From positions 124,001-188,000 of IMG/VR virus record IMGVR_UViG_3300044712_000810: 64,000 nucleotides of DNA; one strand, 5' to 3'. The notes under the pieces are model-generated. The model made no database searches, had not been told where the DNA came from, and saw only the letters and a list, made by a program, of their open reading frames with translations. The position numbers and the translations under genes were made by a program. Shown here in pieces: positions 3,083 through 41,692 of the stretch (the stretch's first letter is position 1; the number at the start of each line of letters is the position of its first letter).

Positions 3083-3501
3083 CTACCAACAACGGTGTCA
3101 TCTTTTAATAAATTTCGACTTAATAATAATTTGGTTATACAAACTATTATTCTATATTTAATGAGTTCCATTTCATGATGTTTAAAGAAAAAATCATCAG
3201 CACCAAGTTTAATTGCTTTTGAAATATCTTTAAATGAAGTTGAAACTGAACTGACAATAATATAACAGTCTAAGTCACCATCATGACGCATTTTATTTAA
3301 TGCTGGAAGAATATGAAATCCGGTTGTTCCAGGCATAATAAGGTCTAATAAAATGATATCAGGTTTAATTTCATTACATAATTTTAAACATTCTTCGCCA
3401 TTTCTGGCCTCATAAACTTCAAAATCATATAATTCAAGAAGGCCTTTATAGGTTGTTCTTGTCAGCTCGTCATCGTCGACTACTAATATTTTAAATATCA
3501 T
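3079..3501 (-). CDS. Single-domain response regulator (receiver)
   Basis: KILVVDDD...PDIILLDLIMPG..G...GADDFFFK. Confidence 0.85.
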   Translation of the reverse strand: MIFKILVVDDDELTRTTYKGLLELYDFEVYEARNGEECLKLCNEIKPDIILLDLIMPGTTGFHILPALNKMRHDGDLDCYIIVSSVSTSFKDISKAIKLGADDFFFKHHEMELIKYRIIVCITKLLLSRNLLKDDTVVGS

Positions 3502-37272: not shown

Positions 37273-37878
37273 ATGAACGTCGAATTTGATTTGGGTTGGA
37301 TTATCGGCAGCATCATTGTAATATATTTCGTTAAGGATTTTCTACTTGAATTGCTTGAAGATATTGTTAATATTTTCAGAAGGAAGCCTGAACCAGTTCC
37401 AACATATATACCACGTTTAAAAGTTCCAACATTTCCACAATGGCCAGATCTTCCAAGAGATATGTCGCCCGGTGTATGGACATCTACAACAACTACAACC
37501 GAACGTGAGTTCGAAGCTGGAGAAAAATATATGGCATTGCACATTGTTCATCAAGACTACAGTGGACAAGATTTTGAAGGAACAGTATTTGATGGATGCA
37601 TTTTCGAATATGTCACGTTTCGTGAATGTGACTGTCGAAATGTAAACTTCATCAACTGTCAATTCAACAATGTGTATTTTCCTGAATCTGACTTGGAAGG
37701 TGCACAGTTTATCAACTGTAATGGACCAGTTGATTATTCCGAAGCAACTGATACAAGAAATATGGTTATTAAAACCATAGAAACTTCCAATTTGGAACCC
37801 ACAAAGAAAGTAACGAGGCCCAGGCTTGTCAGGCCCAGACCTCCTAAGAAAAAGATAAGACTCAGTTTCGAGAAGTAA
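37273..37878 (+). CDS. Membrane-anchored pentapeptide-repeat protein
   Basis: N-terminal TM; DYSGQDFEGTVFDGCIFEYVTFRECDCRNVNFINCQFNNVYF..SDLEGAQF. Confidence 0.8.
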   Translation: MNVEFDLGWIIGSIIVIYFVKDFLLELLEDIVNIFRRKPEPVPTYIPRLKVPTFPQWPDLPRDMSPGVWTSTTTTTEREFEAGEKYMALHIVHQDYSGQDFEGTVFDGCIFEYVTFRECDCRNVNFINCQFNNVYFPESDLEGAQFINCNGPVDYSEATDTRNMVIKTIETSNLEPTKKVTRPRLVRPRPPKKKIRLSFEK

Positions 37879-38061: not shown

Positions 38062-38886
38062 TTAATAATCTTTAAGATGTTTTGATGAAAAACTTAATGC
38101 TAATTCCGCTTCTTTTAATTCAGGCTTCAATTCAAGAACACGTCGCATACATCTTCTTGAATCTTCCCAATGACCTAATTCAATATGAATACGTCCTAGA
38201 TTAAACCATAGTGCATAATTGTTTGGTTCTATTTCAATTGCTTGATTATATAATTCAATAGCACGATCATGCTTTTTTGTTTTTCTTAACACTTGACCTA
38301 ACCTAGAATAATTATGAACAGCAGTAGGATTTAATTCAATACAACGTTCTAAAAATGTTATTGATTCTATATGTCCACTTTTAAATAATACATCCGCCAT
38401 TTCATTAATAGTATCATAATCATCAGGATATTCATTTAGTAGTTTTGTAAACTGTGATAATGCCCCATCAAATTTACGTGTTTCATATAATCTTTTTGCT
38501 TTAGTCAATCGATTCATCTTTTCCATACATTCAAAAATCATTTCTTCATCTTGTTGTTTATTATATAATTCATTAAGTTTAGGGGGCAAAGATCTTAAAA
38601 CGTTAAACATTTCATGTTCTTTACCGTATTTATAATCAAAAATTATATTTAATTGTTTAATATATTTATTAAGTGATATTAAATGTATTGCTCTTTCAAA
38701 TAGTTCTTGAAATTCTTTTCGTTCTTGTATAAACATTTCTTTATTTAATTTAGAAAATACATATAAACTAAATATGACTTGTTTTATTATGACTTCTATA
38801 TTTTTTTCACGTACAGTAGCAGTAATATTTAATAAATATCCTTTTGCCGTTTTAATTAAGTTTCGTGGGTTTTTATCATTGTCCAT
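38062..38886 (-). CDS. TPR protein
   Basis: HNYSRLGQVLRKTKKHDRAIELYNQAIEIEPNNYALWFNLGRIHIELG. Confidence 0.85.
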   Translation of the reverse strand: MDNDKNPRNLIKTAKGYLLNITATVREKNIEVIIKQVIFSLYVFSKLNKEMFIQERKEFQELFERAIHLISLNKYIKQLNIIFDYKYGKEHEMFNVLRSLPPKLNELYNKQQDEEMIFECMEKMNRLTKAKRLYETRKFDGALSQFTKLLNEYPDDYDTINEMADVLFKSGHIESITFLERCIELNPTAVHNYSRLGQVLRKTKKHDRAIELYNQAIEIEPNNYALWFNLGRIHIELGHWEDSRRCMRRVLELKPELKEAELALSFSSKHLKDY

Positions 38887-38924: not shown

Positions 38925-39002
38925 AGTATTAGTGTACGACGAAGGTCGTAGCAAACTCATTTGTTTGTTTATTTTATTGTAAAACTCAAGGAGAACAATA
39001 CC

Positions 39003-39755
39003 GTGGCAAAACTACACGAACTACTGGCAGCTGAAAAAGACGTTAAGACCAAATCACAAAAACTCGTGATCGAAGCAAAAGACACATTCGGCAAGAAGCA
39101 TGATCACTTCACCGGCTTTACAAAGACGTATAAGCCGAAGAATGATGAAGACGCTTATGAAGCTGAAGCACTCAGCGAATCAAAAGAAATGGTTACGACC
39201 GTTGGTCGTAAACTGAATTATCTTCTTGCAAACATGGTTGATGCCATTGATATTGCATATCAGAAAGATTTGACGAACAGAGTGGCAAAAGCAGATATTA
39301 CCGTTGATGGCATTGTCATCGCATCGGACGTACCTGCAACCACACTGTTGCATCTTGAAGATCAGCTTCGCGAACTTCGTGATGTCTGTGACAAGATCCC
39401 GACACTGAAGCCTGGTATCAAGTGGGTGCTCGATGCATCTCTTGGTGAAGGCGTCTATGTCACTGAAAAGCCTGAGGTGAAAATCCGTACAAAGAAGCAA
39501 ACTGTTTACAAGACTGTCGCCCAGGCCACCGACAAACACGCCGCACAAGTTGTGGCTGAAATGCAAGATGTGAACATCGGTAAGTATGAAGAAATTCATA
39601 CTTCCGGTATGATCACTCCTGCAGATAAATCAAAACAAATGGATAAGATCGAGAAACTCATCGCAGCCGTCAAAAGGGCTCGTGCTCGTGCAAACGAACA
39701 GGAAGTCGCTTCTGGCGAGATTGCAAAGAAGCTTTTCGATTATATTACGCAGTAA
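39003..39755 (+). CDS. Uncharacterised 250-aa helical protein upstream of the tRNA-mimic RNA
   Basis: GTG start with AAGGAG RBS; MAKLHELLAAE...QKDLTNRVAKADITVDG...VPATTLLHLEDQL...AVKRARARANEQEV. Confidence 0.8.
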   Translation: MAKLHELLAAEKDVKTKSQKLVIEAKDTFGKKHDHFTGFTKTYKPKNDEDAYEAEALSESKEMVTTVGRKLNYLLANMVDAIDIAYQKDLTNRVAKADITVDGIVIASDVPATTLLHLEDQLRELRDVCDKIPTLKPGIKWVLDASLGEGVYVTEKPEVKIRTKKQTVYKTVAQATDKHAAQVVAEMQDVNIGKYEEIHTSGMITPADKSKQMDKIEKLIAAVKRARARANEQEVASGEIAKKLFDYITQ

Positions 39756-39813
39756 TCGCTTAACAGCGTTACAAATATGGCCAAACTCATTGTGACTGCC
39801 AAGTAATACTCAG

Positions 39814-39890
39814 AGAGGAGACTGCGGTTCGAATCCGCACCGGATGCCCAAAAAACATCATCCGGTCGTCTAGCGGCTTAGGATGCCTCT
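39814..39890 (+). ncRNA. Permuted tRNA-like module 1
   Basis: AGAGG-AGAC-TGCGG TTCGAAT CCGCA-CCGGATG-C-CCA-(8 nt)-CATCCGG-TC-GTCT AGCGGCTTA GGAT-G-CCTCT. Confidence 0.85.
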
Positions 39891-39990
39891 TAACCTAACT
39901 TGGTTCAATCTCAAATTCAAATTCAAATTATTGGCCAACAAGCTGAAAGGCTTAAAAGAAACTATTTCAAAATTGGTTCGACCGACCATC

Positions 39991-40087
39991 GCTCAGGCGC
40001 GGGTTCAAATCCCGTGGGGACCTCCAAAATGCTGGGAGTTTATATTCCTAGTATTCTGGGTCCCCTAGTTCAGTGGTAGAACGGAGT
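39991..40087 (+). ncRNA. Permuted tRNA-like module 2
   Basis: GCTC-AGGC-GCGGG TTCAAAT CCCGT-GGGGACC-T-CCA-(32 nt hairpin)-GGTCCCC-TA-GTTC AGTGGTA GAAC-G-GAGT. Confidence 0.85.
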
Positions 40088-40160
40088 CATTAAACTTACT
40101 TCGGAAGAACGCAATACTGAAATGTTTTGCCAAATATCTCAAAGATATTACCCAACAATA

Positions 40161-40198
40161 GGGGGTCGCGCAGGGTAGCGCGGCCTCCACCATTTTTT
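40161..40198 (+). terminator. Terminator hairpin that doubles as a tRNA-Ala-like minihelix
   Basis: GGGGGTCGCGC-AGGGTA-GCGCGGCCTCC-ACCA-TTTTTT. Confidence 0.75.
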
Positions 40199-40771: not shown

Positions 40772-41692
40772 TTACTTTATTTTTGCTTCATTTCTATTAA
40801 AACTTTGTAATTCAGTTCTTGATACTTCCATTGCTTTAAGACCTAATACTGATAAACTCTTAACCGGTATAAATCCGCCTGATATTTTATTTGGTGCCAA
40901 GTCAATATTGACTCGACCTGGAACACGTTTATGTGCTATTGAATACTTCTTAAGCATATCAGGAGTATTAATCATATACATTAATTTGTCTTTAATTTCA
41001 TTTATTCTCATTTGTTTCTTAAACAGAATTTGAATATGAAATCCAGTTTTACCAGTGAATACAATACGTGCAGATTCAACATCCGAATACTTTATTACAT
41101 AATCATAAATATCTTCGGCTGCTTTCTTATTATTTTCAAAGTTATCACTATCAATGTCCAAAAGTCCAAACCATTCACGTTCACCCATTTCACAATGAAT
41201 ACTTAGGGTTCGGCCGGAGATCTTATTTTCGTAGTTTGAACTGTTAAGTTTTATATATCCTGATGGTGATTCAGAATCTTTTCGTTTAACAATTGTTGAA
41301 TTCAATTCAGGAACTATAAAAAATATTAAGTTTCTATTATTGGTTTCATCAATTATTTCTTTTTTGTGTTTCATATAATAATCATGAACATCTTTTTGAG
41401 TCAAACCAGATGGATAAAATTCATTTTTAACTATTACAGTATCTGGATTTTCTAATTGTTTTGTTTGTGGTAATATTTCTTGTATTCTTCCTACTTGCCC
41501 ATCTTCTAATCTTACTTTAATACCACGTGTATGTTGTGATTTGCTTGTGAGAATATCTTTAACTATGCCGGTTGTTAATTTACCTGTAGGTTGATCTTTC
41601 TTTAATACTATATTTACTTTAATACCAGGCTTAATATTCGCTCTATAAAAATTATCGCTTTCGAACATGTTTGTCATACATAGTGAAAACAT
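40772..41692 (-). CDS. YwbE-like domain fused to LigD-type primase-polymerase (AEP) domain
   Basis: N-term IKPGIKVNIVLKKDQPTGKLTTGIVKDILT..HTRGIKVRLEDGQVGRIQEI; C-term LTQKDVHDYY, LLDIDSD, FTGKTGFHIQI. Confidence 0.8.
   Translation of the reverse strand: MFSLCMTNMFESDNFYRANIKPGIKVNIVLKKDQPTGKLTTGIVKDILTSKSQHTRGIKVRLEDGQVGRIQEILPQTKQLENPDTVIVKNEFYPSGLTQKDVHDYYMKHKKEIIDETNNRNLIFFIVPELNSTIVKRKDSESPSGYIKLNSSNYENKISGRTLSIHCEMGEREWFGLLDIDSDNFENNKKAAEDIYDYVIKYSDVESARIVFTGKTGFHIQILFKKQMRINEIKDKLMYMINTPDMLKKYSIAHKRVPGRVNIDLAPNKISGGFIPVKSLSVLGLKAMEVSRTELQSFNRNEAKIK

What the first reader, a model, noticed from the sequence alone, without database searches (positions are those of the whole stretch)
39840..40065. 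Both permuted modules encode an internal discriminator-CCA, suggesting processing into two-piece, chargeable tRNA mimics
Seen: CCGGATG-C-CCA (39840-39850) then an 8-nt A-rich linker; GGGGACC-T-CCA (40016-40026) then a 32-nt linker that folds on its own (AATGCTGGGAG/TTCCTAGTATT). CCA at exactly positions 74-76 in both copies is unlikely by chance. Established: permuted tmRNA precursors are cut by RNase P and 3'-trimmed to excise such a linker. Inference: mature products may be nicked tRNAs with free CCA ends and discriminators C73 and U73, able to be aminoacylated or to act as uncharged-tRNA signals.
Basis: partly seen in the sequence, partly recalled or inferred. Interest (0 to 1): 0.72.

Follow-up and report, generated by a model that had tools for sequence, protein, structure and literature searches.

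The report
Phage tRNA mimics with internal CCA
Two tRNA-shaped RNAs of a jumbo phage, built in swapped order like bacterial YrlA Y RNAs, carry a conserved internal CCA and belong to a widespread, undescribed phage RNA family that always follows one gene of unknown function.

Summary
Two modules (39814-39890 and 39993-40087, + strand) each read T arm, 3' acceptor strand, discriminator, CCA, linker, 5' acceptor strand, D arm. Both modules recur after the same neighbouring gene (DUF7873) in related phages, acceptor stems change by compensatory substitutions, and CCA is kept in 11 of 12 modules of the window's clade and 21 of 30 family-wide.

The architecture is not tmRNA-like. It matches YrlA-type Y RNAs: a tRNA-like head on a long stem. 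Mycobacterium smegmatis YrlA is already known to be cut by RNase P and to carry a CCA tail (PMC4201824). So processing into pieces with a free CCA is plausible, but it is not shown here; public runs gave no RNA-end data. Aminoacylation cannot be judged.

These RNAs fail two YrlA membership criteria. They lack the Rsr-binding motif. They are not linked to Ro60, which only 2 of 10 complete carrier genomes encode. The constant partner is DUF7873 (19 of 19 lineages), often inside tRNA clusters. No Rfam family and no paper I found covers them. Because CCA is absent in some lineages, a free CCA end cannot be the family's core function.

The parts
38961..39755 (+). DUF7873 gene (264 aa from the first TTG; homologs are about 250 aa), the invariable upstream neighbour of the RNA locus
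   Evidence: Pfam PF25283, 248 bits. Homologs in 19 of 19 lineages examined are followed on the same strand by at least one permuted tRNA-like module. AF2 model pLDDT 92, with no informative structural match.
39779..39784 (+). 5' copy of the self-complementary GGCCAA/TTGGCC box; 5' strand of the outer stem of unit 1
   Evidence: Pairs with 39930-39935 in the MFE folds and in the consensus fold. L018 shows the compensating variant GGCCCA/TGGGCC. A conserved ACATAAAT-like element lies just upstream in relatives.
39814..39850 (+). Module 1, 3' half: anticodon-stem 3' strand AGAGG (39814-18), variable AGAC, T arm 39823-39839, acceptor 3' strand 39840-46, discriminator C 39847, CCA 39848-50
   Evidence: Covariance model R1 scores the module 58.1 bits. 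T-stem and acceptor pairs covary.
39851..39858 (+). Module 1 linker AAAAACAT, with U at -1; predicted to be removed if RNase P and 3' exonucleases act
   Evidence: A-rich and 7-9 nt long in the close relatives that keep CCA; replaced by a 31-nt hairpin in L018. A variant contig in a public run has one extra A and keeps CCA.
39859..39890 (+). Module 1, 5' half: acceptor 5' strand 39859-65, U8 C9, D arm 39868-39884 (tRNA-Glu-like TCGTCTAGCGG), G26, anticodon-stem 5' strand CCTCT 39886-90
   Evidence: U8, G10, A14 and G19 are invariant in 21 of 21 modules.
39904..39935 (+). Single-stranded A-rich tract with CAAAUU hexamer repeats, then the 3' TTGGCC box (39930-35) that closes unit 1
   Evidence: periodic conservation T.AA..T.AA..T.AA; outer stem.
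39949..39992 (+). Unit 2 basal stem, 5' strand (includes AUUG-GUUC)
   Evidence: Pairs with 40088-40132 in the MFE fold. A long basal stem forms in all six close lineages; in the four closest (window, L013, L016, L018) the 3' strand carries a single bulged G.
39993..40026 (+). Module 2, 3' half: anticodon-stem 3' strand GCTC, variable AGGC, T arm 39999-40015, acceptor 3' strand 40016-22, discriminator U 40023, CCA 40024-26
   Evidence: R1 scores the module 78.7 bits. Rfam YrlA gives a partial match of 27.7 bits. U-CCA is invariant in six lineages.
40027..40058 (+). Module 2 linker: A, a 12-bp hairpin rich in G.U pairs, then CU and G(-1), which can pair with U73
   Evidence: In the consensus fold the hairpin pairs covary and the U73.G-1 pair is 6 of 6.
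40059..40087 (+). Module 2, 5' half: acceptor 5' strand 40059-65, U8 A9, D arm GTTC-AGTGGTA-GAAC 40068-82, G26, anticodon-stem 5' strand GAGT
40088..40132 (+). Unit 2 basal stem, 3' strand (GAAC-G-CAAU with a bulged G)
40161..40198 (+). Intrinsic terminator: 11-bp stem, AGGGTA loop, T run
   Evidence: Stem and loop are conserved in L013 and L016. The ACCA that follows the stem in the window is not conserved there.

Best explanation
The 39.77-40.20 kb intergenic region encodes a noncoding RNA locus on the + strand. It holds two tandem units, each a tRNA-shaped head on a long imperfect stem, and ends at an intrinsic terminator. Each head is a circularly permuted tRNA: anticodon-stem strand, T arm, acceptor 3' strand, N73-CCA, linker, acceptor 5' strand, D arm, anticodon-stem strand. 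This is the architecture of YrlA-type bacterial Y RNAs. Shown here: the structure, its covariation, retention of every nucleotide that builds the tRNA elbow, conservation of CCA in this clade, and obligate linkage to the DUF7873 gene rather than to Ro60. Inferred: host RNase P cuts 5' of 39859 and of 40059 (or 40058), and 3' exonucleases trim the linker back to CCA, as for ordinary tRNA precursors and as shown for M. smegmatis YrlA. The base-paired pieces would then stay together, with a tRNA-like CCA end that resists exonucleases. More speculative: the RNA acts with the DUF7873 protein as a tRNA-mimicking particle in phage tRNA metabolism or in conflicts with the host over tRNA. That core role depends on the tRNA elbow, not on the CCA end.
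For: Anatomy and coordinates. The YrlA model is the best Rfam match to module 2 (27.7 bits). It reaches 29-38 bits, partly full length, on homologs in phages FBKp24, RHph_Y65 and TM16, which equals the 36.2 bits of the Rsr-adjacent Y RNA in this genome. Covariation over 21 modules: 94% of cells paired against 60% in shuffles, score 0.916 against 0.264, and all 12 T-stem and acceptor pairs change on both sides. U8, G10, A14, G19, T54, C56, A58 and R15:Y48 are present in 21 of 21. CCA: 11 of 12 in the window's clade and 21 of 30 overall. In four modules of the isolate phages (RHph_Y65, FBKp24, D472, TM16) the CCA is kept and paired with a TGG in the linker. DUF7873 linkage: 19 of 19 lineages, including phages of Rhizobium, Klebsiella, Vibrio, Ralstonia, Gordonia, Arthrobacter and cyanobacteria. 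Precedent for RNase P cleavage and a CCA tail in a YrlA RNA: PMC4201824. Fold z-score of the locus: -5.3.
Against: There is no transcript or RNA-end evidence; the only public runs were contigs and probably DNA. The GNCGAAN0-1G Rsr motif is not conserved. Ro60 is encoded in only 2 of 10 complete carrier genomes, so these are not Y RNAs in the strict sense. CCA is missing from 9 of 30 modules, and some acceptor stems simply continue as closed helices (L021, RSL1), so cleavage cannot be universal. The Y73 discriminators (C, U) differ from the R73 that I recall E. coli RNase P favouring (own knowledge, not tested). DUF7873 has no recognisable fold or motif, so a partnership rests on gene adjacency only.
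Confidence: 0.6

Rival explanations
1. They are genuine Y RNAs. They bind the phage's (or the host's) Ro60/Rsr through their basal stems and tether it to an exoribonuclease, like YrlA.
For: The architecture is the same and the YrlA model hits below threshold. This phage encodes Ro60 (vWA_Ro60 50 bits and TROVE 28 bits) and RtcB. The module 2 basal stem has a bulged helix in the four closest lineages. In RHph_Y65 Ro60 lies about 5.5 kb downstream on the same strand.
Against: The locus is 124 kb from the Ro60 gene. That gene has its own array of six Y-RNA-like genes with a shared stem motif (5' GGTA...TTCAACG, 3' AGTCCT), which modules 1 and 2 lack. GNCGAAN0-1G is absent. Eight of 10 complete carrier genomes have no Ro60.
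Confidence: 0.15
2. They are true permuted tRNA genes. The two ends are ligated (for example by RtcB) into a circle that is then opened at the acceptor end, giving a functional decoding tRNA, as in Cyanidioschyzon merolae.
For: The halves are in 3'-then-5' order with the break at the anticodon loop. CCA is encoded. RtcB is present in the genome and sits directly upstream of DUF7873 in L013.
Against: The flanks form long imperfect stems of about 25 bp rather than a 7-nt anticodon loop, and I saw no bulge-helix-bulge motif in the folds (no dedicated search was run). No conserved anticodon is evident. The genome has no tRNA-splicing endonuclease. Some family members have closed acceptor hairpins that could never yield a 3' end. 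RtcB is absent from 2 of 4 isolates tested.
Confidence: 0.05
3. They are two-piece (permuted) tmRNA genes or relics of them.
For: The T arm, acceptor, CCA, linker, acceptor order is that of permuted ssrA. Two-piece tmRNA models give 24-25 bit partial hits on homologs.
Against: ARAGORN finds no tmRNA in the window or the genome. On modules 1 and 2 the tmRNA models match only the 18-nt T arm. None of the DUF7873-linked modules has G3:U70. The units are far shorter than a tmRNA (170-185 nt against the 213-374-position Rfam tmRNA models) and I saw no tag reading frame or pseudoknots, though I ran no dedicated search. A full D arm and an anticodon-stem equivalent are present.
Confidence: 0.02
4. 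They are decaying scars of tRNA gene rearrangement within a tRNA-rich phage genome, with no function. The CCA is simply inherited.
For: 31 of 32 tRNA genes of this phage encode CCA. DUF7873 often sits inside tRNA clusters. The modules resemble tRNA-Glu and tRNA-His weakly.
Against: Compensatory changes occur at every stem pair. Tertiary-contact nucleotides are invariant across phages of three bacterial phyla. Linkage to one gene is conserved in 19 of 19 lineages. A conserved terminator and conserved flanking stems are present.
Confidence: 0.03

Closest known systems
YrlA-type bacterial Y RNAs (Rfam RF02553), especially M. smegmatis YrlA (Chen et al. 2014, PMC4201824)
   Same: A tRNA-like domain in permuted order (T arm, acceptor-like stem, D arm) sits on a long stem formed by the RNA's two ends, with the tRNA tertiary nucleotides conserved. 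The M. smegmatis member has a 7-bp acceptor stem, is cut by RNase P, and ends in CCA. Members occur in phages. This phage also carries Rsr-linked examples, one of them with A-CCA.
   Different: No GNCGAAN0-1G motif. Not within 4 kb of Ro60, and most carrier phages have no Ro60. Always downstream of DUF7873 instead. The full CCA is genome-encoded, whereas in M. smegmatis only C is encoded and CA is added. Two units are often in tandem. Scores are far below Rfam's gathering threshold (28-38 bits against 69).
Two-piece (circularly permuted) tmRNA of alpha-proteobacteria, cyanobacteria and some beta-proteobacteria
   Same: The gene order is acceptor 3' strand, CCA, intervening loop, acceptor 5' strand.
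   Different: No mRNA-like domain, tag frame or pseudoknots, and no G3:U70 alanine identity. A full D arm and an anticodon-stem equivalent are present. Not found by ARAGORN or the Rfam tmRNA models.
Permuted tRNA genes of Cyanidioschyzon merolae and some other algae and archaea
   Same: The 3' half lies upstream of the 5' half, joined through the acceptor end.
   Different: Those give decoding tRNAs through a circular intermediate made by the splicing endonuclease at a bulge-helix-bulge motif. Here there is no such enzyme, no such motif seen, and no anticodon loop.

Membership tests
YrlA / bacterial Y RNA | tRNA-like domain with T arm, acceptor-like stem and D arm in that order | tested here: met
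   Partial YrlA model match of 27.7 bits on module 2 and 29-38 bits on homologs, all below the gathering score of 69.
YrlA / bacterial Y RNA | GNCGAAN0-1G motif near the 5' end (presumed Rsr/Ro60 contact) | tested here: not met
   No such motif in either unit. The window's GGUUCGA in unit 2 is not conserved in homologs (GGUGUCU, GGUUUCU, GGUAUCC).
YrlA / bacterial Y RNA | Encoded within about 4 kb of the Ro60 gene on the same strand | tested here: not met
   Ro60 is at genome 37.4-39.0 kb and the locus at 163.8 kb. Eight of 10 complete carrier genomes lack TROVE.
YrlA / bacterial Y RNA | Bound by Ro60/Rsr | not testable with these tools
   Needs immunoprecipitation.
Two-piece tmRNA | Alanine identity G3:U70 with A73-CCA | tested here: not met
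   The 3:70 pairs are C-G, A-U, G-C or U-A in all DUF7873-linked modules; discriminators are C and U.
Two-piece tmRNA | Tag reading frame with resume codon, and pseudoknots | tested here: not met
   ARAGORN finds no tmRNA. Rfam tmRNA models match only the T arm. I ran no separate tag-frame or pseudoknot search.
Permuted tRNA gene (decoding tRNA via a circular intermediate) | Bulge-helix-bulge motif at the termini and a splicing endonuclease | tested here: not met
   Long imperfect stems instead, by inspection of the folds. No PF01974 in the genome.
Permuted tRNA gene (decoding tRNA via a circular intermediate) | A 7-nt anticodon loop restored on joining the ends | tested here: not met
   The flanks extend 25 bp or more beyond the 4-6 bp anticodon-stem equivalent, and no conserved anticodon is seen.
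RNase P substrate (tRNA-precursor-like) | 7-bp acceptor stem coaxial with a 5-bp T stem, T loop, 3' NCCA, single-stranded leader | tested here: met
   Position -1 is U in module 1 and a conserved G in module 2. Actual cleavage was not tested.
Aminoacylatable tRNA mimic | Free 3' CCA end plus identity elements for a synthetase | not testable with these tools
   No end data. No anticodon, no G3:U70 and no long variable arm. Module 2 has G-1/U73, which only loosely recalls tRNA-His.

The most novel reading that the evidence does not exclude
DUF7873 and the permuted tRNA-like RNA(s) that follow it form a previously unrecognised ribonucleoprotein, independent of Ro60 and widespread in phages of Proteobacteria, Actinobacteria and Cyanobacteria. 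In many lineages RNase P nicks the RNA to expose a genuine CCA end. The particle would act as a tRNA decoy or tRNA-handling factor in conflicts with the host over tRNA.
Probability: 0.25. Interest if true: 0.85.

Novelty: new variant of a known kind. Interest (0 to 1): 0.66.

Why it matters
tRNA mimicry by Y RNAs has so far been tied to Ro60. Here the same RNA design is tied to a different, uncharacterised protein family in many phages that have no Ro60, usually inside their tRNA gene clusters. That points to a second, unexplored use of tRNA-shaped RNAs by viruses. The family is invisible to tRNA finders and to Rfam. In Klebsiella phage FBKp24 it was annotated as a bogus suppressor tRNA. Natural variants with and without CCA can serve as built-in controls.

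Tried and rejected
1. blastn and megablast of the locus and of 20 kb around it against isolate phages: no match.
2. Exact and gapped DNA pattern scans of viral and metagenome contigs for the module cores: nothing found; one scan failed on pattern syntax.
3. The search for related loci with the DUF7873 protein alone: nothing. Relatives came instead from the protein search plus contig look-ups.
4. Public sequencing runs: only Logan contigs were available. The 'RNA' run is flagged as probably DNA, and the short pieces appear equally in DNA runs. This gives no evidence on transcription or RNA ends.
5. 'Alanine minihelix' idea: the window's terminator reads GGGGGUC...GGCCUCC-ACCA, with G3:U70. The ACCA is not conserved in L013, L016 or L020, so I rejected it as chance.
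6. The window's GGUUCGA in unit 2 resembles the vertebrate Ro60 contact GGUCCGA, but it is not conserved in homologs. Rejected.
7. DUF7873 function: PDB sequence search, PHROGs, PADLOC, Foldseek against PDB and AFDB, VIA-align wide search and the ESM atlas gave only uncharacterised relatives. The best match is 3kdq, of unknown function, at Z 8.7.
8. Literature: nothing for 'DUF7873', and nothing relevant for 'permuted tRNA' with 'phage'.
9. The genome search could not reach the metagenomic contigs L013 and L021-L023, so Ro60 co-occurrence was tested only on complete isolate genomes.
10. ORFs overlapping the locus (39883-40068, 39900-40079, 40065-40193 on the minus strand): judged spurious, because linker lengths differ by non-multiples of 3 between homologs and the conservation pattern is compensatory.

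Full report
**1. The observation.**
The window is part of a 314,837-bp phage genome with terminal repeats (window = genome 124,001-188,000).
- Module 1: TGCGG-TTCGAAT-CCGCA (T arm, 39823-39), CCGGATG (39840-46), C, CCA (39848-50), AAAAACAT, CATCCGG (39859-65), then U8-C9 and a tRNA-Glu-like D arm.
- Module 2: GCGGG-TTCAAAT-CCCGT (39999-40015), GGGGACC (40016-22), U, CCA (40024-26), a 32-nt linker with its own hairpin, GGTCCCC (40059-65), then U8-A9 and GTTC-AGTGGTA-GAAC.

In both modules a short stem equivalent to the anticodon stem joins the sequence before the T arm to the sequence after the D arm (AGAGG/CCTCT; GCTC/GAGT). So each module is a tRNA circularly permuted at the anticodon loop. 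ARAGORN and Rfam at gathering thresholds see nothing. The locus as a whole folds far better than shuffles (z = -5.3) and ends in an intrinsic terminator at 40161-40198.

**2. What kind of RNA it is.**
With relaxed thresholds the best Rfam match is YrlA, the bacterial 'Y RNA-like' family (27.7 bits on module 2). YrlA's tRNA-like domain has the same order: T arm, closed acceptor-like stem, D arm. A genome-wide scan for such modules found a third one at genome 39,661. It lies next to a 540-aa protein that passes Pfam's cut-offs for the Ro60 vWA and TROVE domains, among ordinary tRNAs and close to RtcB. That region holds six Y-RNA-like genes with a shared stem motif (5' GGTA...TTCAACG, 3' AGTCCT). 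Two of them carry tRNA-like modules, one with A-UCA and one with A-CCA plus a linker of about 85 nt. So this phage has a classical Ro60/Y RNA system elsewhere. The finding's two modules share its head but not its stem motif.

**3. The literature precedent.**
Chen et al. 2014 (PMC4201824) define YrlA by three things: a 5' GNCGAAN0-1G motif, the tRNA-like domain, and a position within 4 kb of Ro60. They also showed that M. smegmatis YrlA, the member with a 7-bp acceptor stem, is cleaved by RNase P in vitro and in vivo. Its 5' half acquires CA to end in CCA, and both halves remain bound to Rsr. They raised possible aminoacylation themselves. Salmonella YrlA and Deinococcus Yrn1 are not cleaved.

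**4.
The upstream gene (38961-39755) is a DUF7873 protein (248 bits). I fetched contigs for its homologs and annotated isolate phages. Every one of 19 lineages has a gene-free gap of 300-580 nt after DUF7873, and the gap holds one or two permuted tRNA-like modules on the same strand.

In the window's own clade (DUF7873 at least 53% identical) the acceptor stems are completely different yet always complementary:
- Module 1: CCGGATG, ACCCTGC, ACCCGGC, ACCCGTG, GGGGAGC.
- Module 2: GGGGACC, AGGGCCC, AGGGACC, GGGGGCC, ATCCCCC.

CCA is kept in 11 of 12 of these modules. In module 2, U73, the G at -1 and the linker hairpin are also kept.

I built a covariance model of the T arm, acceptor stem and D stem (R1). 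It scores true modules at 44-80 bits and junctions between tandem tRNA genes at 39.5 bits or less. On 21 modules aligned to it:
- 94% of cells pair, against 60% in shuffles, and the covariation score is 0.916 against 0.264.
- All 12 T-stem and acceptor pairs show changes on both sides. The alignment is model-fitted, which favours the structure somewhat.
- U8, G10, A14, G19, T54, C56, A58 and the R15:Y48 pair are present in 21 of 21.
- C74 and C75 are each present in 20 of 21, while the discriminator is U7/A6/C5/G3.

Across all 30 well-formed modules CCA is present in 21. It is absent in L020 module 1, both L021 modules, both RSL1 modules, Fryberger, one Racecar module and both PA-SR01 modules. 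In several of these the acceptor helix simply continues as a closed hairpin. In four modules of the isolate phages (RHph_Y65, FBKp24, D472, TM16) the CCA is retained and pairs with a TGG in the linker.

**5. A caveat on 'chance'.**
31 of 32 ordinary tRNA genes of this phage encode CCA. The modules probably arose from phage tRNA genes, for example by tandem duplication and loss of the outer halves, so they would inherit a CCA. Presence alone is weak evidence. Persistence while every neighbouring base pair turned over is the real sign of selection. That selection is specific to some lineages, not family-wide.

**6. Not Ro60-linked.**
The locus lies 124 kb from the phage's Ro60 gene. Of 10 complete genomes that carry the DUF7873-RNA locus, only two encode a TROVE protein: this phage and Rhizobium phage RHph_Y65. 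GNCGAAN0-1G is absent, and the one similar-looking string in the window is not conserved. Two of the three sequence-level YrlA criteria therefore fail, so I do not file these RNAs as YrlA members, although they are built like them.

The constant partner is DUF7873. Its model is confident (pLDDT 92), but no structural or profile search gave a functional hint. Its neighbourhoods are tRNA clusters (RHph_Y65, Phendrix, Racecar). In metagenomic relatives they include RtcB, NAMPT/NMNAT-like, NADAR and Tad4 genes. That fits RNA repair or host-conflict regions but does not prove it.

**7. Other anatomy.**
- Unit 1 is closed by two copies of the self-complementary box TTGGCC/GGCCAA (39779-84 and 39930-35), with a compensating variant in L018.
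- The 3' side of unit 1 has a conserved A-rich tract with 6-nt periodicity (CAAAUU repeated), and related CAAACU-type repeats lie at the 5' end of distant family members. I have no explanation for these repeats.
- Unit 2 sits on a stem of about 25 bp; in the four closest lineages that stem carries a single bulged G on its 3' strand.
- The terminator stem and loop are conserved, but the ACCA after it in the window is not.

**8. Mechanism.**
- Shown: structure, strand, conservation and gene linkage.
- Inferred from established tRNA and YrlA biology: each module offers RNase P a 12-bp acceptor/T-stem stack, a T loop, NCCA and a single-stranded or hairpin leader. U at -1 in module 1 is, as I recall, the preferred base. 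G at -1 opposite U73 in module 2 loosely recalls tRNA-His.

Cleavage at 39858/39859 and 40058/40059, followed by exonuclease trimming of the A-rich trailers back to CCA, would turn one transcript into three base-paired pieces with two tRNA-like heads. I could not test this. The only public runs containing the locus are assembled contigs, present equally in DNA libraries. The genome has no CCA-adding enzyme and no tRNA-splicing endonuclease of its own. Charging cannot be assessed.

**9. Verdict.**
The broader result is an undescribed, widespread family of phage tRNA mimics tied to DUF7873. No Rfam family reaches threshold on them, and in phage FBKp24 one module was annotated as a spurious 'tRNA-Sup-TTA'.

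Noticed in passing
Own genome C1:39,030-40,000 (L012:6030-7000): Downstream of the phage Ro60 gene lies an array of six Y-RNA-like genes with a shared stem motif (5' TTG.AAGGTA...TTCAACG, 3' AGTCCT...TTTT), interleaved with tRNA-Met, tRNA-Asp and tRNA-Tyr. Two of the six carry permuted tRNA-like modules. One has A-CCA and a linker of about 85 nt (T arm at L012:6167-6183). The other has a tmRNA-like acceptor (G3:U70, A73) but UCA instead of CCA (L012:6662-6735).
   Followed up: partly
window 39904-39929; also L026:~3340-3375 and L027:~3455-3480: Conserved A-rich tracts with 6-nt periodicity: CAAAUU repeated after module 1, and CAAACU/UAAACU-type repeats at the 5' end of distant family members. 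They are predicted to be single-stranded. They might be a protein-binding platform; I have no explanation.
   Followed up: no
L025:3536-3615 (Klebsiella phage vB_KpM_FBKp24, MW394391): The record's 'tRNA-Sup-TTA' is a miscall. It spans a flanking hairpin plus the T arm and 3' acceptor strand of the second permuted module. A promoter is annotated between the DUF7873 stop codon and the first module (L025:3320-3351).
   Followed up: partly
L013:650-4756; L019:3149-3697; L022:9540-9914: In metagenomic relatives DUF7873 is flanked by RtcB, NAMPT and an NMNAT-like gene (L013), by NADAR (L019, L020) or by Tad4 (L022). These gene families, as I recall, are linked to RNA repair, NAD salvage and counter-defence.
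   Followed up: no
window 40161-40195: The terminator hairpin reads like an alanine minihelix (G3:U70, A73, CCA). The ACCA is not conserved in relatives, so this is probably coincidence.
   Followed up: yes
L042:2270-2760 (Pseudanabaena phage PA-SR01): About 500 nt that look like unannotated coding sequence sit between DUF7873 and the two modules. They may be an inserted mobile gene.
   Followed up: no
Own genome C1:290747-290821: ARAGORN calls a tRNA with anticodon CUA (labelled Pyl), which would be a possible amber suppressor among the phage's 32 tRNAs.
   Followed up: no
window 38062-38886 (-), 37273-37878 (+), 40772-41692 (-): Neighbouring genes encode a TPR-repeat protein, a pentapeptide-repeat protein and a protein with a DUF2196 domain.
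   Followed up: no
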